Below are positions 1-53,377 of a stretch of DNA of 64,000 nucleotides, piece by piece. The DNA comes from Rebecca billardiae RCC1528 (Eukaryota > Protista > Haptophyta): assembly GCA_965240325.2 (NCBI GenBank), contig OZ251244.1, positions 1,116,001-1,180,000 of the forward strand. Reading direction: 5' to 3'. The notes under the pieces were generated by a model. The model was not told the origin of the DNA, did not search any database, and saw only the letters and a list, made by a program, of their open reading frames with translations. Each line of letters opens with the position of its first letter. Position 1 is the first letter of the stretch. The translations under genes were made by a program, and so were the position numbers.

Positions 1-1206
1 TCGCGCCCATGCCGCGCCCTGAAAGCCTGCCGCCACGCCTGCAGCGCCGCCCACTTGCCCTCCGGGTCGTCCTGCCAGCTGCGCACCGCCGCGCGTCCGG
101 CCGCGCGCGCGCCGCGCGTCGGGCCGCGCGCCCGCGCGCGCAGCGCGGCGCGCGGCGCGCGGCGCGGCGCGCGCGCACGAGTGCGAGATGAACGCGTCGA
201 TGCGGCCGGCTGTCGCCGGCCGCGAGAGCGCGAAGAGTCCGGGGTCCGGCTGCGGCGACTGGAGGTCCGACAGGGTCAGCACGGAGAGCGGGACGGCCCT
301 CAGCCCCTCGCGCCCGAGGCTCGCCGCCTCCTCGGCCGACGCGCCGCCGAGCAGCGCGGCGATGCCGGCGGCGGCGGAGACGGTCTCGCCGCGCGAGAGC
401 AGCCAGCCGTGCACCCGCCGCCGGTTCGCCGGCTGCAGCAGGAAGGCGCCGATCGCGATCAACTCGACGCCAAAGATGACTCGCAGCCACGACACCGCGA
501 GCACGCCGCCGCCGAGCCCGCCGCCGCCGGCCGCGGTGGCGGGCACGACGAGCTCAGGGCGGAAGGCGTGCACGGCGGCGATGCCGAGGGCTCCCGTGCA
601 ACCGACCAGCACCGCCACGACGAGCAGCCCGAGGCCCATCGTGTGCCACAGCCGGTCGAGTTGGTCGCGCGGGTGGAGGCGTGCGGCGGCGCCCGCCGCC
701 ACCCAGCCGGCGATCGCGGCTGAGTCGGCAGCGATGAAGAAGCGGAGCACGTAGATGGCGACGGTGTACCGGCAAGGGAGCGGTCCAAACGCGTGGCTCT
801 CGCACGTCGGCGGCAGCTCGCGGCGGAACGCGCTCGCCTCGAAGGCCACGGCGGCGACGACCGCGACAAGCGTCACGGTGATCGTCGCGCTCGCCGCGCC
901 GACGAGCCGCGGCGAGGTGGGCGGCACGGCGAGGAGGAGGCAGACGAGCGCGGGGGCGATGCCGAGAAAGAAGTAGCTGTAGAGCGCCTCGCTCTCGCTG
1001 TCCAGCCCCGAGCTGAGCATCATTGCGAGCCCGCCGGAGAGGCACCCAAGCGCGAGCCCGCCGCCGAGCAGCGCGAGCGGCAGCTGCACGCGCACGCCAA
1101 AGGCGCGGCCCTGGCGGTGGGCCGCGTCGAGCCGGCTGCGGATCGAGGCGGAGTGCGCCTGCCCGCGCACCGACGACGTCGCGGGCGACCCCGGCGGCTC
1201 TTCCAT
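1..1206 (-). CDS. Multi-pass membrane protein with C-terminal TIR-like domain (partial, runs off window start); exons 1206-179 and 78-<1
   Basis: Not in the ORF track because the frame runs off the window. ATG at 1206 (MEEPPGSPATSS...) is followed by ~6-7 hydrophobic helices, then ...GRIDAFISH. A GTGCGC..GCAG intron (178-79) joins it to give DAFISHSWQDDPEGKWAALQAWRQAFRARHGRE, the bA-aA start of TIR/SEFIR-like domains. Confidence 0.75.
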   Translation of the reverse strand, partial: MEEPPGSPATSSVRGQAHSASIRSRLDAAHRQGRAFGVRVQLPLALLGGGLALGCLSGGLAMMLSSGLDSESEALYSYFFLGIAPALVCLLLAVPPTSPRLVGAASATITVTLVAVVAAVAFEASAFRRELPPTCESHAFGPLPCRYTVAIYVLRFFIAADSAAIAGWVAAGAAARLHPRDQLDRLWHTMGLGLLVVAVLVGCTGALGIAAVHAFRPELVVPATAAGGGGLGGGVLAVSWLRVIFGVELIAIGAFLLQPANRRRVHGWLLSRGETVSAAAGIAALLGGASAEEAASLGREGLRAVPLSVLTLSDLQSPQPDPGLFALSRPATAGRIDAFISHSCARAAPRAARRAARAGARPDARRARGRTRGGAQLAGRPGGQVGGAAGVAAGFQGAAWAR

Positions 1207-3243
1207 GTCGCACGAGAAGCAAGGTCCAAATGCAAATGGCTCACCACTCCAAGCAGGCGGCGTCTCGCACGCGCACGATCAGCGAAGACTGAAGACGACG
1301 CTGATTAATAGACGAGGCGGCAGCTCTATTAATCAAGGGAGATCGCCGCTAGCTACCGTGTGCAAGACCGCGCGGGAAGTTGGAGCTTCTCACTCACTGT
1401 AGAACTACTTGTACAGAAGCTTCTGAGCCTCGATGAATCGGTTCATACTCACGGCCGAGCGATGGTGAGCCGCAGTCCGAGCTTGCAAGGGCGCACCCTA
1501 CCACACGCTCCGCGAGGGGTTTACCTCCCCTGGGGGCGTATAGTCCCCCGGGCCGCCGCTGCGCTACTGTACTGGAGACCGCTAACCCGGACTGCTGGCA
1601 GACAGCGCTGAGCGCGCGCACCGCGGCGTCTGGGCGCGCGCGCCACCTTTGCACGGCCGTCGAGTTGCCGTGCAAAGGTGGCGCGTTGCTTGCGTGGTAT
1701 CGGACCCCTGCCATGCCTCGCTCTGCGCCCCGCAGCTTGCTCCTCGCCGACATTGCCGCGCCCACGATGAGCGCGCATGCGAGCGTCGCCTCACGGAATG
1801 AGCAATGTGCGCCGGCCGGCGTGGGATGCGATCAGCTCGGGGCACGAGCTCCGCTGACCGCGGGAACATGTACCTATGCGCAAGCCGCGCCGCCTTGAGC
1901 CACCGATCGTGAGCATGACATGCCTCTCGCGCGCAACTTGTCTTCGTGCCCTTGTGACTATGGCCCCGGACTGCCCGTGACAGGACGACTCGTCAGAGCA
2001 ACTTCTCATGCATGGCATCACGACAGCCATGTGCGCAGGCGTATTGATGTAGCATTGGAATGCGCATATCTCGCTGCGAGCACACACAACCCGAAGACTT
2101 CGATTCGTCGCTTCAGGGCTGTCGCAGTCTGTTGTTTCAGCTGCACTGCATGCGTGGCTGGTGCAGGCTGATCGGCGAACTTGTCAACAGCCGGTTAAAA
2201 GCTGCAGCATCACTGAATTCAATTTCAAGACGCACGATCGGTAGCTCCAGGCGGCAAGGCTTGCGCGTATGGAGCGCTCGTTGGAACTTGTGCCCGGTTT
2301 GGCGCCCACGCGGCGAGGGCGACGACGGGCGTACATGGGGCCCGCGGCGGCGGGAAGCGCGCGGGCGCGGCCGAGAACGGCACAGTCCGGACGCCTCTCG
2401 CCAGCCGCGGACGCGCACCGCGCCTCCTCCTCGCACGCTGCTAACTTGATCCGGTGCCAAGCGGTGGTTTAGCTGCCGACCAGCTCAAGTTCCACGGCTG
2501 GTCAAGGTTCGGCTTGCGACCTCGCCGCTGGTGCTTGCAAGTGAGGTACATGAGTTGGTTGAACTCCCGCGCACCCGCTCTGCGCTCGTCGACGCCCTCT
2601 GAAGGTGCCTCGGGGGGCATGCGGGGCAGTGGAATGCAGTGGTTCGGCGTTGCCCCTCAGTCGTCCAGCGCGCAGGCGACCTAGCGCGGATGTGGTGCGC
2701 GCATGGCCCGGTAATTCGATCGCGGCATGTCTGTCTGGGGTGAAGTTTCACCCCGGCGGGCGGGCCCAGCTGAAGTTCCTGATACGATCTCCGTTGTTGA
2801 ACCTCGAGATTTTACGAGATTTACGTCGGGTGAATGGGTTGAATTTGTGGAGTCACTGGTCATATTCACATCCTGAGCGACCAATGGCGGTCATTGCGTA
2901 GTTGATACTTGATCGGTTTTGAGCAGAGCGACATCAATACCTCGCGCGCGAATCCAACTTTCGCAGGTCGTTGTCGTCTACTTATGGACGGATCAACGTA
3001 TTCGTGGACTGCTCGCATACTTCATAGGCAGGCCACCCGGATCTCAGTGGGTCCCAAAAGTGAAGAGCCTAGAACTCCATACGATATATTCAAGATCACC
3101 AACCGGCAAGAGCCTCAAAAGACCTTATGTCGTTAAAAGTCGTATAGAATCAGTCGAACCCTCTTTAGCGAGATCGATCCAGATCGGCACCGCACCGTCC
3201 TCGCCCTGCAGCACCGTCCTCACCCTGTTTGATCTCTGTGCCG

Positions 3244-4755
3244 ATGTTGCCGACCGACCTGGTGGAGAGCATCACCAAGCACCTGCCGCTCACTGACCTC
3301 GTGAACGCGAACGCGGTCTCTCGCTTCTTCCGCGGCGCGCCGGGCAACCACTCGCCCGTCGAGCGCGCGCTCCTTGAGCGCGCGCGCGGGCGCGGGCACG
3401 AACGCGCGCTCGCCGCCGCGGCTCCGCGCGACGACGGCACGACGACGGGCGAGCTCCTCGCGCACGAGCGCGTCCATGCCCTCGCACGTGCGCACAGCCA
3501 CGCCGTGGCGTGCGGCACGTCGGTGCTGCACCAGCTCAGCATGAGCGCGTTCGTGGACGCGGACGGCGCGCTCTACACGTGGGGCGAGGAGAAGGCCCTC
3601 GACGACGACGACAGCGAGGAGGAGGAGGAGGAGGAGGCGCGCTCGTATCGCGCATGCGCCGGGCTCGGCCACGGCGAGACGGGCTCGGTCCTCGTGCCCA
3701 CGCGCGTCGCCTCGCTCTCGGCCGTGCGCATGTGCGCGGTCGCCGCCGGCTACGACCACCTGCTCGCACTGAGCGCGAGCGGCGAGGTCTACACGTGCGG
3801 CGAGAACCGCGAGGGCCAGCTCGGGCTGGGCGACACGGCGACGCGCCGCACGTTTGTGCAGGTGACGGCGCTCGCGCACGAGGTCGTCGTGTGCGTCGCG
3901 GGCGGGAGCCGCTGCAGCCTCGCGCTCAGCACGGCGGGCCGCGCGTACAGCTGGGGCCAGAACAACCACGGCCAGCTCGGCCACGGCGACACGGCCGGCA
4001 GGCTGGAGCCGACGCGCATCGAGGCGCTGGACGACGAGCGTGTCGCGGGTGCGAGCGCCGGCATGTTCCACGTGCAGCTCGTCTCGGTCAGCGGCGCTGT
4101 CTACTCGTGCGGCCGCGGCCACGGCGGCCAGCTCGGCCACGGCGGCCAGCTCGGCCACGGCGACCAGCAGGATCAGCACACTCCCAAGCGCATCGAGGTG
4201 CTCGACGGCGTGCACGCCGTGCACGTGAGCGCGGGCGTTGCGCACAGCCTGGTCGTGGACCGCACGGGCGGGGTGTACTCCTTCGGCCAGGGCAGGTCTG
4301 GCTGCCTGGGCCACGGTGACGAGTCCGCCGTGTCCACGCCCACGCGCATCGACGCGCTGGCGGGCGTGCACGCCATGTCCGCCAGCGCGGGCTCAGACAG
4401 CAGCGTGGTGCTGAGCGCGGACGGCAGCTTGCACGCGTTCGGCTCCAACCGCTGCTCGCAGCTCGGGGCGAAGACGCGGCATACCCGCGTGCCGCACCCG
4501 ACCTCCGTGCATGTCGACGCGCACGCGCGCGTGAGCGACTGCGCGCTCGGCCACAACCACGCGCTCTTCACGACGGTGGACGGCGACGTGTACTCGTGCG
4601 GCCAGCAGACGGCCGCGCTCGGCCATGGCGTGAGCGCGGACGCGGACGGGACGGACGTCGCCACACCCTCGCCATGCATCGCACGGCGCAGCCTGCCACC
4701 CGCGCCCGAGGTCGCCTCCCCGGGATCGGGACGGTGCGCGATGCCCTGCTGCTGA
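3244..4755 (+). CDS. F-box-like + RCC1 repeat (beta-propeller) protein, paralog 1
   Basis: N-terminal LPTDLVESITKHLPLTDLVNANAVSRFF (F-box pattern). Repeated RCC1 motifs: VAAGYDHLLAL..G.VYTCGEN..GQLGLG, AYSWGQNNHGQLGHG, VSAGVAHSLVV..G.VYSFG. Intronless. Confidence 0.88.
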   Translation: MLPTDLVESITKHLPLTDLVNANAVSRFFRGAPGNHSPVERALLERARGRGHERALAAAAPRDDGTTTGELLAHERVHALARAHSHAVACGTSVLHQLSMSAFVDADGALYTWGEEKALDDDDSEEEEEEEARSYRACAGLGHGETGSVLVPTRVASLSAVRMCAVAAGYDHLLALSASGEVYTCGENREGQLGLGDTATRRTFVQVTALAHEVVVCVAGGSRCSLALSTAGRAYSWGQNNHGQLGHGDTAGRLEPTRIEALDDERVAGASAGMFHVQLVSVSGAVYSCGRGHGGQLGHGGQLGHGDQQDQHTPKRIEVLDGVHAVHVSAGVAHSLVVDRTGGVYSFGQGRSGCLGHGDESAVSTPTRIDALAGVHAMSASAGSDSSVVLSADGSLHAFGSNRCSQLGAKTRHTRVPHPTSVHVDAHARVSDCALGHNHALFTTVDGDVYSCGQQTAALGHGVSADADGTDVATPSPCIARRSLPPAPEVASPGSGRCAMPCC

Positions 4756-46792: not shown

Positions 46793-49700
46793 ATGAGCAT
46801 GCGCCGCACGGCGTCGAAGGGCGAGGCGGGCGTGCCACGGCGCACGCGCACCGGCTCGCTCCGCGAGTCCATCTCGACGATGGGCCGGCGCGGCTCGGGC
46901 GTGTTTGAGTCCGCCTCGTTCAAGAAGCTGAGCACCGGCGCCGCGCCGCCGGACATGGTGACGACCGCGGCGGACGACGCGCCGACGATGATCATCACGT
47001 ACACGCGCGACGAGGGCCTCATCACGTACATCAACCGCGAGGTGTACAAGACCCTCGGCCCCGACGCGACCGTGGGCAAGCACGTCGAGGAGCTGCTGGA
47101 GCCGGCGTTCCGGCGCGAGCGCACGCTCGAGGTGTGCCGCTTCCTCTTCGGCGTCGGGCAGGGCGTGGAGAGCAAGAAGTCCTCGCTCATGCTCCGCTCC
47201 GCCGCGGGCAACGCGCTCCCCGCCAACCTCGTCATGCGCGCGACCGCCGGCTCGGCCGTGTGCACGGCCAACCTGTTTCCCGGAACTTTCGCGCCCGACC
47301 TGCTCGACTGGCACACGGCGTTGACGGCGCACCGCGCGCCGTCGCCCGCGCACCCGCCGTTGAGCTCGCTCCTCCACCCCGGCCACGCCGGCGTGCGCCC
47401 CATCTTCGTCGAGATGGACGAGCTCGTGCAGCCCCCGGACGGCGGGCGCGCGCCAGAGTGGCGCGAGGTCGCGCGCTGGAGAGACGGGCTGGAGCAGCGC
47501 GTGCTGCCGCCCGGCGCGGAGCAGGGCGGCGGCGGCGGCGCGGGCGCGGGCGCGGGCGAGGCGCCGCAGCCGCCCGAGCTCCACTTCGGCAAGGCGCACC
47601 TCTCCTCCGTCAAGTTCCAGCACTTCATCGAACTTCGGAAGGTTCTCGCTGCCGGCGTGGTGAAGCTCGATCTCGATCTGGAGATTGAGATCGACGAGAC
47701 GGCGATGGCGGCGGCGGCGAAGGCGGAGGCGGGCGAGGAGCTGCGCCCCGCGGCGGAGCACGCGGGGGACGACGCGCGCGCGCGCGCGGCGCGCCTCGCC
47801 CTCGCCGAGGCGATGGTCGACGCGCTCATCGGCGCGGGCCACGTCGTGCCCACCGCGCGCTCCGAGCTGATCCATTTGGTCCTGCTGCAGCACGTTCATG
47901 CGACCGAGCGGCGGAAGAAGGCGCAGCGCGCGGCGGGCGTGCGCGGCTCGGCCGGCTCGGCGGGCTCGATGGCCGCCCCGCCCGCGCCCGCCGCGCAGCG
48001 CGCCCGCACCAAAGCCCAGCACGACGCCGCCGACGCCGACGCCGACGCCGCCGCCGATGACGACGACGATGACGACGACGCCGACGCGGGCGCCGAGGGC
48101 GCTGGTGCGGAGGCGCCTGAGGCCTGCGACGTGCTCGCCGGCACGGTGGAGCTCCTCGCGGAGCGGGTGGGCGTGTTCGTGCGGCTGAAGCGCGCGCTCG
48201 ACCTCGGCTCGATGACCGAGCCGAGCGCGCCGCACCAGCGCGCGCCCGCCGTGCGCTTCGTCTTTCTCTGCCTCGGGCCAAGCGGCGCGGCGCGAGAGAC
48301 ACACTCGGTCGGCCACGCTCTCGCGACGCTGATGTCGCATCGCGAGTTTGCGGGCGCGGCGCAGCTGCTCGGCTCGAAGCAGGAGCTGCTCGAGGTGCGC
48401 GCCGCGCGCACCGCACACCGCGCACCGCGCACGCGCCGCCGCGCCGCGCCTCTCGCCCAGCCCTGTCTCGCGTGGCCGCGCGCGCCGAGCGCGCCCGCGT
48501 GCCCGCGCGCCGCGCGAGCGTGCCCCCGCGCGCCGCGCGCGCTCGCCCGACCCGTCCCCGCGGCCGCGGCCGCCATCCGCCGCCGCCTTCCGCCGCGCGC
48601 GCGCCGAGCGCAGGCGATCGACGGCTCGATCGACTCGACCAACCTCACGTTCGCGCAGAACATTGAAGTGATTCGGATCGCGCGCGAGAGCGCGGCCGCG
48701 CGCGCGCCCGGCCGCGCCGCCGCCGGCCGCGCGGACGGCGGGTGCTGTGGGCTGCTGCGCGCCGGCGGCGCGGGCGGCGCGGGCGGCGGCGGCTCGTCGG
48801 ACGAGGACGACGACGTGCCCGAGATGCTCATCGAGATGGGCGAGCTCGACGGCGAGTCGCAGCCGGTGGGCGCGGGCTGGATCAAAAGGGAAAACGGCAT
48901 GCGCCGCCGCTCGTCCATACGGCTGGTCGAGCATGCGGTTTCGGCCGCGCCGCCCGAGGCGAACACGAAGCAGATCACCACGATCGAGGCGCCGAAGGAG
49001 GTGATCCGCGTGGGCCGGCGCGACTACGCCTGCGGCGCTCGTGTGCGCGTGCTCGCTCTTCGCCGTGCTGATCATGGTCTTCTGGCACCCGCACAGCGCG
49101 CGGCACGACGTGCTCACCGCCAAGATGACTAAGTATAACACTCACATTACCTCGCCGCTGTTCGCGACGTCGCGGGGCGCGCCGCTGGTGCTGCCGCTGA
49201 GCGCGGAGGGCGCGCGCGACGTGGTCGACGTCAAGCTCGTCGCGGCGTGCACGCTCAACGACTGCGGCGCCGGCACCGCCGCCGCCGCCGGCGGCGCGCA
49301 CCGGCAGCGCCGCGGCCGGCTGCTGAGCGCGCCGCGCGAGCTCGCCGACGCCGCCGACGCCGCCGACGCCGCCGGCGCCGCCGGCGCGCTGCACGGCGCG
49401 AGCTGGGTGCGGTGGACGCTGCGCGTGGGCGACGGCGACGGCGGCGGGCATGGCGCGGGCGAGCGGCTGTGCGCGAGCGCGCGGTACGCGCTGCGCCCGA
49501 CGCAGCAGGTCGAGGTCCTCACCACGGTGGACGTGATGGCGGCGCCGTGCGCGGACGCGGCGCGCGCACACGGCGCGCGGCTCTCGCTCGACGTGAGCAC
49601 AGACGCAGTCGAGCCGCTGAGCGTGCTCGTGCAGCCGATCCAGATCGGCCCGATCGGGCGGCACCGGATCCTGCTCGGCGGGCTCCTCTTCGTCGTCGTC

Positions 49701-51361
49701 TTCGCCGGCATCATCTCCGAGGTTATCCACCGCTGCTACACGACATTTCTCGGAAGCTTCCTCGCGCTCGCGCTGCTCGCCCTCACGCACGAAGTGCCCG
49801 AGGTGCACACCGTCGTGGCGATGATCGACGCGGGCACGCTGATGCTGCTGTTCGCGATGATGGTGAACGTGCACCTGCTCTCGCTCACCGGCTTCTTCCA
49901 GTGGGCGAGCGTGCGGATGGTCGAGCTCAGCCGGGGCAACACGATGGCGCTATTCTTCCTATTGACGAACCTGACCGGCTTCCTCTCGGCGTTCCTCGAC
50001 AACGTCACGTGTGTCATGCTGATCGGGCCGGTGACGATCAAGCTGTGCGAGCAGATGAAGATCGACCCGGTGCCGTTCTACCTCTCCGAGACGATCGCCG
50101 CGACGATCGGCGGCACCGCCACGCTCATCGGCGACCCGCCCAACGTCGTGATCGGCAACAAGCTGCAGCTCGGCTTCACGGACTTTTTAATATTCAACGG
50201 CCCGCTCGTCCTAGTGATCATGCCGCTCTCGACCGTTGTGCAGTACCTCCGCTTTCGGCACACGTTCCCCACCGAGCGCGTGCAGCTGGACCTCGGCGCG
50301 CTCAAGGCGGAGAACAAGATCCACGACGAGCGCTCCCTCCTCTTCCTCGCCTTCATCTTCGGCGGGATCTTTCTCGGACTTTTCCTCTTCGAGCTCCACG
50401 GCCACGAGCCGTCGTGGTTCTGTCTCCTCGGGATGCTGGGCGCGAGCATCGCGACCTCGCCGCACAACATCCACCACGCGATCGCCGCGGTGGAGTGGGA
50501 CACGCTGCTCTTCTTCGCCGGGCTCTTCGTCTTCGTCGAGTCGCTCGCCGAGATCGGTGCGCGCGCGCGCGGCACCGCTGCGCGCGGCACCACGCACGCC
50601 CGCCCGCTGCGCGCCGTCGGGCGCGCGCGAGCGCGCGCGCGGGCGGGCAGTCGCGCGGGCGCGTGGGCGGGTGTGCGCTCAGCCGCCGCAACTGTCCTCC
50701 CCCCGCGCGCGCGTGCCGGCCACGCAGGCCTGATTCGCTTCGTCGGCGGGCTGATGAGCGGAGTCATTCGAACCGTGCCGCTGGATGCTCGACTGGTGCG
50801 CGCCGCGCCGCCGCGCCGCCGCGCCGCCGTGCCGCCGTGCCGCCTCACGCGGCGCGCGCAGCCTGGCTCAGCCGCGCGCGCGCCCGCGCGATCGCCCCTC
50901 GCCCTCGCGATCGCGTCCGCGGGATGCTCGCCCTCGCCCTCGCCCTCGCGGTCGCCACCGCCCCGCTCTCGCGCCCCGCTCCCCGGCAGTCCGTGGCGAT
51001 GGTGATCTTCCTGTGGGTGTCGGCAATCGGCTCGGCGTTCTTGGAGTCGCTGCCGTACACGACGACGATCACGTACATCATCATCAACCTGCTGAACGAG
51101 GACGACCTGGAGATCCCGATCCTGCCGCTGGCGTGGGCGCTGTCCGTCGGCGCGTGCGTCGGCGGCATCGGCTCGATCATGGGCTCGTCGGCCAACCTCG
51201 TCTCGATGGCCGTCTCAGAACGGTACGCGCCCGCCAACCCGATCAAGGGGAAGCACTTCCTCCAGTATGGCTTCCCGCTGCTGCTGCTCTGCGTCTCGAT
51301 CGCCACGGGCTACCAGCAGGTGCTCTTCACGGTGATCCAGCCGTACAAGCAGTACCACTGA
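46793..51361 (+). CDS. Chimeric transporter: PAS-like + SLC4/band-3 cytoplasmic domain + OCA2/P-protein (ArsB/NhaD/CitMHS, IT superfamily) membrane domain; introns 48395-48613, 50557-50727, 50796-50989; +1 frame discontinuity at ~49005-49040
   Basis: PAS-like segment: EGLITYINREVYKTLG...VGKHVEELLEP...LRSAAGNALPANL. Band-3 motifs: IFVEMDEL..EWREVARW..LE, FGKAHLSSVKFQHFIELRKVL, VFVRL..A..LG.MTE..VRFVFLCLGP, VGHALATLMS. P-protein motifs: SEVIHR, IDAGTLMLLFAMM, LSAFLDNVT, IGGTATLIGDPPNVVI, VEWDTLLFFAGLF, GSSANLV. Confidence 0.8.
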
Positions 51362-51444: not shown

Positions 51445-53377
51445 CAGGTCGCTGCTTCAACTTTCGGACCCGATTGCTGTTCACTTTTTGTGCACGATGG
51501 CGGCGGCGCCCCCGGGGGTCTGCGGCGCTCGAGATCGCGTCTGGCGGCACCCCCAGGGTGTGCCTGAGGTACAACCCAGCGGGTATGTACCATTTAGACG
51601 ACTTTGTTCCACTACCATGTGCCCCACGGACGCCACGAGGTCCACGACGGGGCCGCCGACGGCATGCTTCAAGTGCTTCAACTTTCAGACCCGCGGGCTC
51701 TCAGCGCGCGCGCCGAGTCAGAGCCGCTGTCTGGTGAGCCGTGTGAGTCGGGCTAACGGCATCATGCACTCTAGATACCACATACATGCAGCAGACCACC
51801 TCAGGGATTCACTAGGCTTCCGCGCCACCGCCAGCCGGCGCTGCGGCTGCGCGGCCAGCACGGTCGACGACGACAGCTCATACTGACGCGGCGGTGCCCG
51901 GCGCGGCCGGCGCCGGCGCCGATTGCTTGCGAGCTTCCGAGCACTCGGCCTTCTTGCACAGCCACCCTCGGAGATCGATCTTCTGGCACGTCGGGCAGCG
52001 TCTCGCCTTCGCCATCGGGCAGGGCGACACGCCGCACGAGCAGGTCTGGTGACAGCGGTCGAAGCTCGCCTCGAGCTCAGCAGCAGCTGCCTCCGCCTCC
52101 GCCTTCTTCCGCGCACGCTCGGATGCGGCCGCCGCCTTGCGCGCCGCCTCGGCCTCCTTCTGCGCGGTCTGCGCGGCCTTCTGCGTGTTGATCTCACGCA
52201 ACGACCACGAGCCGTTTTGGCTGTCGAGCCGCGTGTTGTCCGGCTTCGGCGCGGCGAGCTCCACGGCGGGCACTGGAAGGACACCGAGCTGGTCTGCGAG
52301 CTCACCCGGGTCGAACCTCACCGCCTTGCGCACCGCGGCGAGCTCGGCGTCGTGCTCATCACGCTCGCGCACGAGCTTGGCGGCCTGGCGGCCGGAGTAC
52401 TCCTTGGCGAGCTCGAGCTTGGCGCGGAGGGCTGGAGCAGTGTTCGAGCGCATCCCCGCAGGCGTGGCTGTGAACGCACTAAACGTAGGTGATGCGTGCG
52501 CGCCAGAGGGCTCGCCGTCGTCGGCCGAGCGCGCAGCCCCGCGCTCCGGAGTGCTTGGCGCCGCTGCCGGCGCCGCCGCCGCGAGCGACGCGGCATCGGC
52601 CTCCTCCTCTTGCCGCCTGCGCTCCGCCTTCGCCTGTGCGGCATCGAGACGATCCACGAAGTCCTTCCTGTTGATCTGGTCCGGGTCCAACACGTTGCCC
52701 GTGATGCCCACCTTGCGCCACGCGTTGATGATGTCAAAGGTGTCACACCACGAGAACCACGCACCCGGCGTGGACAGCTCCTCACAGCCGCCGAGGATCT
52801 GGAGGAACTCGCGGAGGCCGATCGTGGGCTCCTTGCCGTAGCTCGCCGTGTACGCGTGCTTGAAAGACGCCAGGCCCTTCTGGTATTGCGAGTGGAACTT
52901 GTGGTTGTACTGATCGAGAGCCTTCACGGTGCGTGCGGCCGCGCGAGGGCGGAGAGGTGATTGTGCGCGCGTCGCGCGCGCGCGCCGGGCCGATTGCACG
53001 CCAGGTACACCCGGGGCACGCGCGCGCGCCGGAGAGGCGCTGCAGCCGTCCGCGCGCACGGGCGCCTACCTGTAGGAAGTGCGACGTGTTCGGCTCCTCG
53101 GTGAAGATGCGGATGCCGAACTCGGACTCAGCAGTGCCGAGGGCTGCGAGCACGTCCTCCGTGTACCGCGACGAGTGGTTGTCGAGCAACAGCACGATCG
53201 GGAAGGCGATGGGCTCCAGCCCCGCAGCCACCAGAGCTGCGTTGAGGTCACCAGACGCGCCGACAGGCCGCCTAGCCCTGCCGCGCGGCGCCCGCCACAC
53301 AGCAGCCGCTGCGCGAGGTGCGTCGCCATCGCCGGGTCTGAAAGACGAAGCAGTCCGAAAAACGAAGCAGCGACCTG
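51445..53377 (-). mobile_element. pogo/Tc1-mariner superfamily DNA transposon, internally deleted (1933 bp)
   Basis: 25-bp TIRs CAGGTCGCTGCTTC(AAC/GTT)TTTCGGAC at both ends, each flanked by TA (51443-44, 53378-79). Contains a DDE_1-type transposase remnant. Confidence 0.88.
51878..53250 (-). pseudogene. 5'-truncated pogo-like DDE transposase with intron 53069-52922 and C-terminal Cys-rich (Zn-finger-like) tail
   Basis: Spliced product reads IVLLLDNHSSRY...EEPNTSHFLQ|ALDQYN...IINAWRKVGI (DDE_1 second and third acidic motifs) and ends CHQTCSCGVSPC...CPTCQ...CKKAEC. The HTH and first catalytic Asp region are absent. Confidence 0.8.

What the first reader, a model, noticed from the sequence alone, without database searches (positions are those of the whole stretch)
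46793..51361. Unusual fusion: PAS + SLC4 band-3 cytoplasmic domain joined to an OCA2/P-protein transporter
Seen: recognisable band-3 N-terminal motifs, preceded by a PAS-like segment, are followed by an OCA2-like TM + luminal domain + IT-superfamily membrane domain instead of the HCO3- cotransporter domain. Known: the band-3 cytosolic domain normally accompanies SLC4 bicarbonate transporters, and OCA2 regulates organellar pH via anion conductance. Inference: a sensor-gated anion/pH transporter made by domain shuffling, possibly relevant to algal carbon concentration or pH control. I do not recall this architecture being described.
Basis: partly seen in the sequence, partly recalled or inferred. 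Interest (0 to 1): 0.8.

Follow-up and report, generated by a model that had tools for sequence, protein, structure and literature searches.

The report
PAS–Band 3–OCA2-like transporter fusion gene
This GC-rich alga has one gene that places a PAS sensor fold and the regulatory inside part of the red-cell Band 3 bicarbonate exchanger in front of an unrelated OCA2 (albinism-protein) type membrane transporter. The same design is made as a single message in related protists, but here the gene carries one unexplained reading-frame break.

Summary
At 46793-51361 (+) lies a four-exon gene of about 1,327 codons. It encodes a PAS fold, a Band 3 cytoplasmic domain (Pfam 1e-32; profile against solved SLC4 N-terminal domains 1e-41 to 1e-47), one membrane helix, a GOLD-like beta-sandwich, and an OCA2/P-protein-type IT-superfamily transport domain (CitMHS 5e-55). 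There is no SLC4 membrane domain.

The fusion is real. Uninterrupted transcripts of 1,253-1,341 aa from relatives carry both halves in the same order, and they validate all three introns. One of these transcripts clusters with Pavlovales sp. CCMP2436. Two Blastocystis proteins and an unplaced lineage share the design.

One defect remains. The frame changes at about 49025, where the window has 34 nt and relatives have 36, and no intron fits. The available reads did not cover the site, so I cannot tell an assembly indel from a recent real lesion. All 64 family-conserved transporter positions downstream are intact.

Function is inferred, not shown: a dimeric anion carrier or conductance regulated by the cytosolic PAS–Band 3 module. 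I found no paper on this architecture, but the sequences already sit unnamed in public sets.

In passing, the nearest Band 3-type domains are fused to NhaA-type Na+/H+ antiporters, so the domain looks portable.

The scan found the same architecture before on another piece of this genome (s1-336777).

The parts
46793..48394 (+). Exon 1 (534 codons): disordered N-terminus, PAS fold, most of the Band 3 cytoplasmic domain
   Evidence: Open frame from the ATG at 46793. Aligns to P0001 residues 97-646 together with the first part of exon 2. GC rises from 55% to 69-77% at about 46500.
46949..47338 (+). PAS fold (residues 53-182)
   Evidence: Profile against the PDB hits PAS domains. AF2 model has pLDDT 81 and pTM 0.73. 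Foldseek: the 50 listed hits are all PAS/LOV/PYP, prob 1.0, TM 0.5-0.76. Weak Pfam PAS hits fall at the same place in the window and four relatives.
47390..48394 (+). Band 3 cytoplasmic domain (PTS-EIIA-like fold), main part, with an Ala/Asp-rich low-complexity insert
   Evidence: Pfam PF07565 1e-32. Profile against NBCe1, AE2 and AE1 N-terminal domains gives 1e-41 to 1e-47. 1,237 Band 3-type matches in the representative library.
48395..48613 (+). Intron 1 (219 nt, GT..AG, in frame, no stop)
   Evidence: Removing it restores the contiguous 'LLE / (A/T)IDGSID..TNLTF' of P0001, P0002 and P0004. The genomic fragment P0127 runs into an intron at the same codon.
48614..49024 (+). Exon 2, first part: end of the Band 3 domain and the cytosolic linker, with a Cys-Cys motif (48743-48748) and a basic RRRSS site
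   Evidence: Frame A aligns to the relatives up to 'RRD' at 49016-49024. A paired-Cys motif (CC, or CxxxC in one member) occurs in all 7 members.
49025..49028 (+). Frame break: the reading frame changes by +1 (equivalent to -2) here
   Evidence: There are 34 nt between the RRD codons and the FAVLIMVFW codons, where relatives have 12 codons. MAFFT against the P0001 cDNA needs a 2-nt gap in the window. An intron cannot fit. Reads did not cover the site.
49029..49085 (+). Transmembrane helix 1 (frame B)
   Evidence: The hydrophobic stretch ends in FAVLIMVFW, identical to P0001. It is modelled as a helix.
49104..49664 (+). Luminal/extracellular beta-sandwich, GOLD-like, with a low-complexity loop
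   Evidence: AF2 pLDDT 81. VIA-align: SEC14L2/SPF GOLD Z 9.2, p24 GOLD 8.2 and 7.3, TMED1 7.0, ACBD3 GOLD 6.8, TPP2 7.0. These are the same families reported for human OCA2 in PMC10372470.
49704..50556 (+). IT-superfamily (CitMHS / OCA2-like) transport domain, first part; end of exon 2
   Evidence: Pfam CitMHS 4.6e-55. VcINDY 3e-9 and ArsB 7e-7 among solved structures.
50557..50727 (+). Intron 2 (171 nt, GT..AG)
   Evidence: Splicing restores 'AE(I/L)GLIRF(V/I)GG' as in P0001.
50728..50795 (+). Exon 3 (68 nt)
   Evidence: Matches P0001 'GLIRFIGGHMSDFIKTVDIDDRL'.
50796..50989 (+). Intron 3 (194 nt, GT..AG, changes frame)
   Evidence: Splicing restores '..RL(S/T)VAMVIFLWVSAIGSAFLESLPYTTTITYIIINLL', near-identical to P0001.
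50990..51361 (+). Exon 4: last part of the transport domain, with the second hairpin Asn, and stop TGA at 51359-51361
   Evidence: Pfam CitMHS profile positions 282-336. The GSSAN motif is invariant in 58/58 relatives.

Best explanation
The locus is one four-exon gene for a multi-domain membrane protein of about 1,327 residues. The order is: disordered N-terminus, PAS fold, Band 3 (SLC4-type) cytoplasmic domain, linker with a Cys-Cys motif, one transmembrane helix, a GOLD-like beta-sandwich on the far side of the membrane, and an OCA2/P-protein-type IT-superfamily transport domain. Shown: the domain content, the order, the splicing, and that relatives make this as one transcript. Inferred: the membrane part works like OCA2 and its DASS/ArsB relatives, as a dimeric elevator-type anion carrier or anion conductance. 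It keeps both hairpin-tip asparagines that bind Na+/substrate in DASS proteins. Also inferred: the cytosolic PAS–Band 3 module sits under the membrane domain and tunes its activity, as the N-terminal domain of AE2 does through an interlock with the transmembrane domain that contributes to pH-sensitive transport. The PAS fold would add a ligand- or partner-dependent input. The single frame break at about 49025 is most likely a small indel error of the assembly, or a very recent change, because everything downstream is still perfectly conserved.
For: Pfam gives Band_3_cyto 1e-32 and CitMHS 4.6e-55 on consecutive parts of the + strand. The two frame pieces are collinear with single proteins of relatives: P0001 97-646 at 41% identity and 657-1279 at 69%. 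P0001 sits on a 4,398-nt intronless contig with one CDS at 63-3902. P0002 and P0003 are MMETSP transcripts marked complete. All carry PF07565 and PF03600. PAS fold. GOLD-like domain in the OCA2 position. The window protein has the consensus residue at all 64 columns conserved in at least 93% of 58 OCA2-like proteins, including the Asn of 'LDNVT' and 'GSSAN'. PMC10372470 gives Asn442/Asn741 as the conserved Na+/substrate residues of OCA2. The regulatory role of the SLC4 N-terminal domain comes from the PMC10066210 and PMC10810954 abstracts. All three introns begin GTGCGCGC and end in AG, and their removal restores the relatives' sequence exactly.
Against: No RNA data exist for this organism in the served runs, and the one DNA run did not cover 48894-49064, so a full-length product from this copy is unproven. 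As assembled, the frame is broken. Substrate, membrane location and any regulation are untested. OCA2's own mechanism (channel versus carrier, Cl- versus dicarboxylate) is unsettled. The GOLD-like assignment rests on middling Z-scores (7-9.2), and the Atlas shape search gave only generic beta-sandwiches. A second gene of the same design is noted elsewhere in this genome, so this copy could be dispensable.
Confidence: 0.6

Rival explanations
1. The frame break is real. This copy is a recently inactivated paralogue (a young pseudogene), or it now yields only a soluble PAS–Band 3 protein ending at the TAA at 49130-49132.
For: As assembled, the frame shifts at about 49025 and no intron can repair it.
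Against: There is only one break in about 3,980 coding nt. All three splice junctions are intact. All 64 family-conserved transporter positions downstream of the break are kept. Identity to P0001 in that half is 69%. Any decay must therefore be very recent.
Confidence: 0.3
2. The break is read through by a programmed +1 ribosomal frameshift.
For: The shift needed is +1. Other notes of this scan propose programmed +1 shifts in this genome (unchecked).
Against: The old frame has no stop or obviously slow codon at the shift site; it stays open to 49132. Relatives encode the region in one frame, so the break is not a conserved feature.
Confidence: 0.03
3. Two unrelated neighbouring genes (a soluble Band 3-like protein and an OCA2-like transporter) were joined only by the reader's gene model.
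For: The frame change falls exactly between the two halves.
Against: Seven proteins from at least three lineages carry both halves in one chain. Several come from intronless transcript contigs. The conserved first transmembrane helix begins within a few codons of the last conserved cytosolic residues, leaving no room for a terminator, promoter or start.
Confidence: 0.03

Closest known systems
OCA2 / P protein (pink-eyed dilution; PED-like clade of the IT superfamily)
   Same: It has the same membrane architecture: a cytosolic N-terminus, one helix, a luminal GOLD-like beta-sandwich, then an IT-fold transport and scaffold core with two hairpin asparagines. The best named homologues of the transporter half of P0001, the closest relative, are vertebrate OCA2/P proteins and choanoflagellate 'pink-eyed dilution-like' proteins.
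   Different: Human OCA2 has a disordered cytosolic N-terminus with dileucine sorting motifs (PMC10372470). Here that place holds a folded PAS domain and a Band 3 cytoplasmic domain of about 600 residues.
SLC4 family (AE1/Band 3, AE2, NBCe1)
   Same: The cytoplasmic domain is homologous over nearly its whole length: 1hyn residues 37-326, E 2.4e-41. It also lies N-terminal to the membrane domain, as in SLC4.
   Different: There is no HCO3_cotransp (PF00955) membrane domain. The membrane part has a different fold and superfamily. A PAS domain precedes the Band 3 domain, which the canonical SLC4 proteins I scanned lack.
Protist proteins with tandem Band_3_cyto domains plus an NhaA-type Na+/H+ antiporter domain (P0148, P0166, P0176)
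   Same: Their Band 3-type domains are the nearest non-fusion neighbours of the window's domain on the tree. They too sit in front of a non-SLC4 ion transporter.
   Different: The membrane domain is different (PF06965), the Band 3 domain is duplicated, and Pfam reported no PAS domain at E<=0.001.
Lsi2 / ArsB-type transporters (the sister group of PED-like proteins in Marron et al. 2016)
   Same: Same IT superfamily: Pfam ArsB 2.7e-08 and solved ArsB 6.7e-07.
   Different: The named hits among the 120 listed matches of P0001's transporter half are OCA2/PED-type, not Lsi2. The luminal beta-sandwich is reported to be unique to OCA2 among IT-superfamily structures.

Membership tests
SLC4 bicarbonate/anion transporter family | HCO3_cotransp (PF00955) 14-helix membrane domain | tested here: not met
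   No PF00955 hit on any piece of the gene at E<=1. Canonical SLC4 representatives scanned the same way give 1e-56 to 1e-249.
SLC4 bicarbonate/anion transporter family | N-terminal Band 3 cytoplasmic domain (PF07565) | tested here: met
   Pfam 1e-32, above the gathering score. Profile against solved SLC4 N-terminal domains gives 1e-41 to 1e-47.
OCA2 / P protein (PED-like IT-superfamily transporters) | IT-superfamily (CitMHS) transport core with the two conserved hairpin asparagines | tested here: met
   CitMHS 4.6e-55. The Asn of 'LDNVT' and 'GSSAN' is invariant in 58/58 relatives, including a vertebrate OCA2. I did not map these to human Asn442/Asn741 residue by residue.
OCA2 / P protein (PED-like IT-superfamily transporters) | One N-terminal helix followed by a luminal GOLD-like beta-sandwich before the core | tested here: met
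   The model has pLDDT 81. GOLD domains of SPF, p24, TMED1 and ACBD3, and TPP2, score Z 6.8-9.2, matching the pattern published for human OCA2. The Z-scores are middling, so support is moderate.
OCA2 / P protein (PED-like IT-superfamily transporters) | Closest named homologues are OCA2/P proteins rather than Lsi2/ArsB/SLC13 | tested here: met
   Tested with the transporter half of P0001, the closest relative. Vertebrate OCA2/P proteins score about 1e-77 and 'pink-eyed dilution-like' 7.5e-90. No named Lsi2 appears among the 120 listed matches.
OCA2 / P protein (PED-like IT-superfamily transporters) | Organellar chloride conductance / luminal pH control | not testable with these tools
   This needs electrophysiology or pH imaging. 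It is known only for mammalian OCA2 (as cited in PMC10372470).
PAS domain | Five-stranded antiparallel sheet flanked by helices, in the order 2 strands, helices, 3 strands | tested here: met
   AF2 secondary-structure order. The 50 listed Foldseek PDB hits are all PAS/LOV/PYP.
PAS domain | Sequence match to a curated PAS model above threshold | tested here: not met
   Window PAS_8 scores E=0.047, 14.1 bits against a cut-off of 21.8. The best relative, P0124, scores PAS_9 1.6e-4, 22.3 bits against 27. The family profile does reach PAS structures at 2.6e-6.
LOV (flavin-binding, light-sensing PAS) | The GXNCRFLQ flavin-cysteinyl motif (recalled from established knowledge) | tested here: not met
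   The window has 'EVCRFLFG', without the Asn and Gln. Relatives read CRAL, CREL and CLQL, and the Blastocystis and P0124 members have no Cys there.

The most novel reading that the evidence does not exclude
The Band 3 cytoplasmic domain, here with a PAS partner, is not an SLC4 speciality. It would be an ancient, portable cytosolic control module that protists have attached to at least three unrelated ion-transporter folds: SLC4, NhaA-type Na+/H+ antiporters and OCA2-like IT transporters. All three folds bear on pH or ion balance. That would imply one shared way of gating transport by cytosolic pH or a metabolite. It would also tie OCA2-type proteins mechanistically to acid-base regulation.
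Probability: 0.3. Interest if true: 0.75.

Novelty: new variant of a known kind. Interest (0 to 1): 0.55.

Why it matters
Three points follow if the reading is right.

1. **Origin of the Band 3 domain.** It has been studied almost only in animal SLC4 proteins, as a cytoskeleton and enzyme anchor and a regulator of transport. Finding it in front of an OCA2-type transporter, and in other protists in front of NhaA-type antiporters, suggests its original job was regulating a transporter, not a red-cell-specific role.

2. **OCA2 mechanism.** OCA2's transport mechanism and regulation are still disputed. A natural version with a folded, recognisable regulatory module gives a new construct for expression, electrophysiology and structure work.

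3. **Algal physiology.** For haptophyte-type algae it is a candidate regulated anion pathway for organelle or cell pH. No evidence yet ties it to carbon concentration or calcification.

Tried and rejected
- **Reads.** Only one run held any of the stretch (share 0.05). Its contigs are sparse and none covers 48894-49064, so neither the frame break nor expression could be checked.
- **An intron to repair the frame.** Only 34 nt lie between conserved codons. A GTGCGCG..CAG candidate at 49043-49096 would delete the conserved first helix. Rejected.
- **Exact-pattern and protein scans of metagenome contigs** for further copies of the junction found nothing.
- **Word-index searches with the N-terminal half** found only 3-4 relatives.
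- **Exhaustive representative search.** It found 1,237 Band 3-type proteins. The fusion family is represented there only by N-terminal fragments (P0127-P0129), so it could not give a census of the fusion.
- **LOV reading of the 'CRFL' motif.** Rejected, because the flanking Asn and Gln are absent and the motif is not conserved.
- **Atlas searches.** The shape search of the luminal domain returned only generic beta-sandwiches.
- **Literature.** No paper holds 'Band 3 cytoplasmic domain' with OCA2, or PF07565 with PF03600, and none of the six papers using 'Band_3_cyto' is about a non-SLC4 fusion, going by title and abstract. One broad query was badly designed and uninformative.
Full report
**What is in the sequence.** The region is the GC-rich (69-77%) body of a + strand gene, flanked by DNA of about 52-55% GC upstream. 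ORF listing shows three consecutive + strand frames that together hold the coding sequence. Antisense ORFs of similar length also appear, which is the usual artefact of such high GC.

Pfam on the three frame pieces gives:
- Band_3_cyto at 1e-32, 114 bits against a cut-off of 34;
- CitMHS at 4.6e-55, plus a C-terminal CitMHS piece at 4.7e-07;
- only a sub-threshold PAS_8 at 0.047;
- no HCO3_cotransp.

**Gene model.** Reading the DNA and comparing with relatives gives four exons:
- exon 1, 46793-48394;
- exon 2, 48614-50556;
- exon 3, 50728-50795;
- exon 4, 50990-51361, with the stop TGA at 51359-51361.

The three GT..AG introns are 219, 171 and 194 nt, and each starts GTGCGCGC. Removing them restores sequences that are contiguous in the relatives: '..LLE / IDGSID..TNLTF', 'AE.GLIRF.GG', and '..RL.VAMVIFLWVSAIG'. 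Intron 1 contains no stop and is in frame, which is why a plain ORF reads straight through it. P0127, a genomic fragment of a relative, runs into an intron at the same codon as intron 1.

**The frame break.** Up to 'RRD' (49016-49024) the protein is in one frame. From about 49026 it continues in the +1 frame as 'TPAALVCACSLFAVLIMVFWHPH..'. Between the RRD codons and the FAVLIMVFW codons the window has 34 nt. P0001 and P0002 have 12 codons there. MAFFT against the P0001 cDNA needs a 2-nt gap in the window. No intron can fit in that space.

The single public run that holds parts of the stretch has identical short contigs elsewhere in the gene but none over 48894-49064, and no RNA run was available. 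I therefore cannot say whether this is an assembly indel or a real lesion.

Downstream of the break the protein has the consensus residue at every one of the 64 columns conserved in at least 93% of 58 OCA2-like proteins. It is 69% identical to P0001 there. Any real lesion must therefore be very young.

A programmed +1 shift is unlikely. The old frame has no stop near the site (it runs to 49132), and the relatives have no break.

**Is the fusion real?** Yes. The word-index search found proteins of 1,279, 1,300 and 1,341 aa carrying both PF07565 and PF03600. A second search added P0004 (1,253 aa), Blastocystis sp. proteins KAK8803325.1 and KAK8803269.1 (1,117 and 1,134 aa), and an unplaced lineage, P0048/P0124 (1,172 aa).

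P0002 and P0003 are MMETSP transcripts marked complete. P0002's 90% cluster holds a fragment annotated Pavlovales sp. CCMP2436. P0001 lies on a 4,398-nt contig with one uninterrupted CDS at 63-3902, which is an mRNA-like contig. The window's two frame pieces align collinearly to P0001 97-646 and 657-1279. It remains untested in this organism.

**The domains, one by one.**

(a) *PAS.* Pfam is below threshold for the window. Weak PAS hits fall at the same N-terminal place in the window and four relatives, the best being PAS_9 at 1.6e-4. A 7-sequence profile of the region hits PAS domains almost exclusively among 177,635 PDB sequences: HIF-3a 2.6e-6, FixL 1.1e-5, then HIF-1a, BMAL1 and PER. The AlphaFold model (pLDDT 81, pTM 0.73) has the order strand-strand-four helices-three strands. 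The 50 listed Foldseek PDB hits are all PAS/LOV/PYP. It is not a LOV domain. The window's 'CRFL' lacks the flanking Asn and Gln of the LOV motif and is not conserved in relatives.

(b) *Band 3 cytoplasmic domain.* The profile hits NBCe1 (2.8e-47), AE2 (6.6e-44), NDCBE, AE3 and AE1 (1hyn residues 37-326, 2.4e-41). An Ala/Asp-rich insert sits where relatives also have a variable loop.

(c) *Linker.* A paired-Cys motif is present in all seven members: CC in six, and CxxxC in P0124. It lies at 48743-48748 in the window. A basic RRR(S/Y)S site is kept in the window and in P0001. These may be a lipidation site and a kinase site; that is inference only.

(d) *Helix 1 and the luminal domain.* The model (pLDDT 81) is a beta-sandwich. 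An all-against-representatives structural search puts the GOLD domain of SEC14L2/SPF first (Z 9.2). The GOLD domains of p24beta1 (8.2), p24delta1 (7.3), TMED1 (7.0) and ACBD3 (6.8), and TPP2 (7.0), also score. Viral jelly-roll capsid proteins and other beta-sandwiches score equally well (Z 8.2-9.2). Mesdaghi et al. reported GOLD domains and TPP2 as the top matches for human OCA2's luminal domain, and that this domain is unique to OCA2 within the IT superfamily (PMC10372470). The Z-scores are middling, and an Atlas shape search gave only generic sandwiches, so I rate this as moderate support.

(e) *Transport core.* Pfam gives CitMHS. The nearest solved structures are VcINDY and ArsB. For the same half of P0001, the named homologues are vertebrate OCA2/P proteins (about 1e-77) and choanoflagellate 'pink-eyed dilution-like' proteins. 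That places the family in the PED-like rather than the Lsi2-like group of Marron et al. 2016 (PMC5100055).

**Evolution of the fusion.** On a tree of the transport domain, the window groups with P0001, P0004 and P0002 (SH-aLRT 99). The Blastocystis and P0048 fusions lie across a deep, fully supported split, near a vertebrate OCA2 and diatom proteins. Several non-fusion proteins lie closer to the window's clade than those fusions do. An AU test rejects a single fusion clade (p=2.4e-6). Long branches are involved, so I treat this with caution.

On a tree of the Band 3 domain, all seven fusion members fall in one 13-row set (SH-aLRT 96), apart from 49 other Band 3-type proteins. The seven of those that I scanned are canonical SLC4 proteins or Band 3-only fragments. 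A single origin of the module is not excluded. Either the PAS–Band 3 module is old in the PED-like family and was lost many times, or it moved between paralogues.

Three of the six non-fusion neighbours in that set are themselves new-looking fusions: tandem Band_3_cyto domains in front of an NhaA-type Na+/H+ antiporter domain (PF06965, 1e-46 to 1e-50). OCA2-like transporters with other N-terminal modules (ankyrin repeats, B-box) also appear in the hit list. Both partners are evidently prone to shuffling in protists.

**How it most likely works.** The following is inferred, not shown.
- By homology with OCA2, DASS and ArsB proteins, the membrane part should be a dimeric elevator-type anion carrier or anion conductance. 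The conserved hairpin asparagines suggest a DASS-like ion/substrate site.
- The N-terminus of OCA2 is cytosolic. That is the correct side for a Band 3 cytoplasmic domain.
- In AE2 the N-terminal domain interlocks with the transmembrane domain and contributes to pH-sensitive transport (PMC10066210; PMC10810954 abstract).
- By analogy, the PAS–Band 3 module would regulate the OCA2-like core, with PAS adding a ligand or partner input.
- Substrate, location and any link to carbon concentration are unknown.

**Novelty.** I found no paper that mentions this architecture. Marron et al. discuss PED-like genes in protists without any Band 3 domain. The sequences, however, are already public and unnamed.

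The scan itself found the same architecture earlier on another piece of this genome (s1-336777). That note says it was in no public protein set, which my searches contradict. I could not read that other copy, so I do not know whether it is an allele or a paralogue. Other notes of the scan call this genome a very GC-rich haptophyte alga, which fits the Pavlovales link found here.

**Verdict.** This is a new variant of known kinds (OCA2-like transporter, Band 3 cytoplasmic domain, PAS). Its main interest is as evidence that the Band 3 cytoplasmic domain is a portable regulatory module. In this genome it carries one unresolved frame break.

Noticed in passing
Proteins P0148, P0166, P0176; not in the window: Marine protist proteins of 1,264-1,446 aa carry tandem Band_3_cyto/PTS_EIIA_2 domains in front of an NhaA-type Na+/H+ antiporter domain (PF06965). 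They are the nearest neighbours of the window's Band 3 domain on the tree. This is a third transporter fold carrying the domain.
   Followed up: partly
window 48743-48748: A paired-Cys motif between the Band 3 domain and the first membrane helix occurs in all seven fusion proteins aligned (CC in six, CxxxC in P0124). It may be a lipid-anchoring (palmitoylation) site. A basic RRR(S/Y)S site follows in the window and in P0001.
   Followed up: no
window 48395-48613, 50557-50727, 50796-50989: All three introns start GTGCGCGC and are about 80% GC. Intron 1 is in frame and free of stops, and the stretches holding introns 2 and 3 are also open in one frame, so plain ORF reading runs through them and adds false Ala/Arg/Pro-rich segments to the protein.
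   Followed up: yes
Proteins P0043, P0025, P0028, P0032, P0038: Other protist OCA2-like transporters carry different N-terminal cytosolic modules: ankyrin repeats, or B-box zinc fingers in the dinoflagellate Polarella. The N-terminus of this transporter family appears to be a hot spot for domain accretion.
   Followed up: no
another piece of the same genome (earlier finding s1-336777): A second gene with the same PAS–Band 3–OCA2-like design, reported as a four-exon gene of 4,242 letters, was noted elsewhere in this genome. Whether it is an allele or a paralogue of this one is unknown.
   Followed up: no
window 51878-53059, minus strand: A 393-codon ORF lies just downstream on the opposite strand. 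It has an Ala/Glu-rich coiled-coil-like middle and a Cys-rich C-terminal end, and was not identified.
   Followed up: no
Proteins P0002 versus P0003: The two MMETSP transcripts are identical except that P0003 lacks a 41-residue stretch inside the transport domain. This could be an alternative isoform or a mis-assembly.
   Followed up: no
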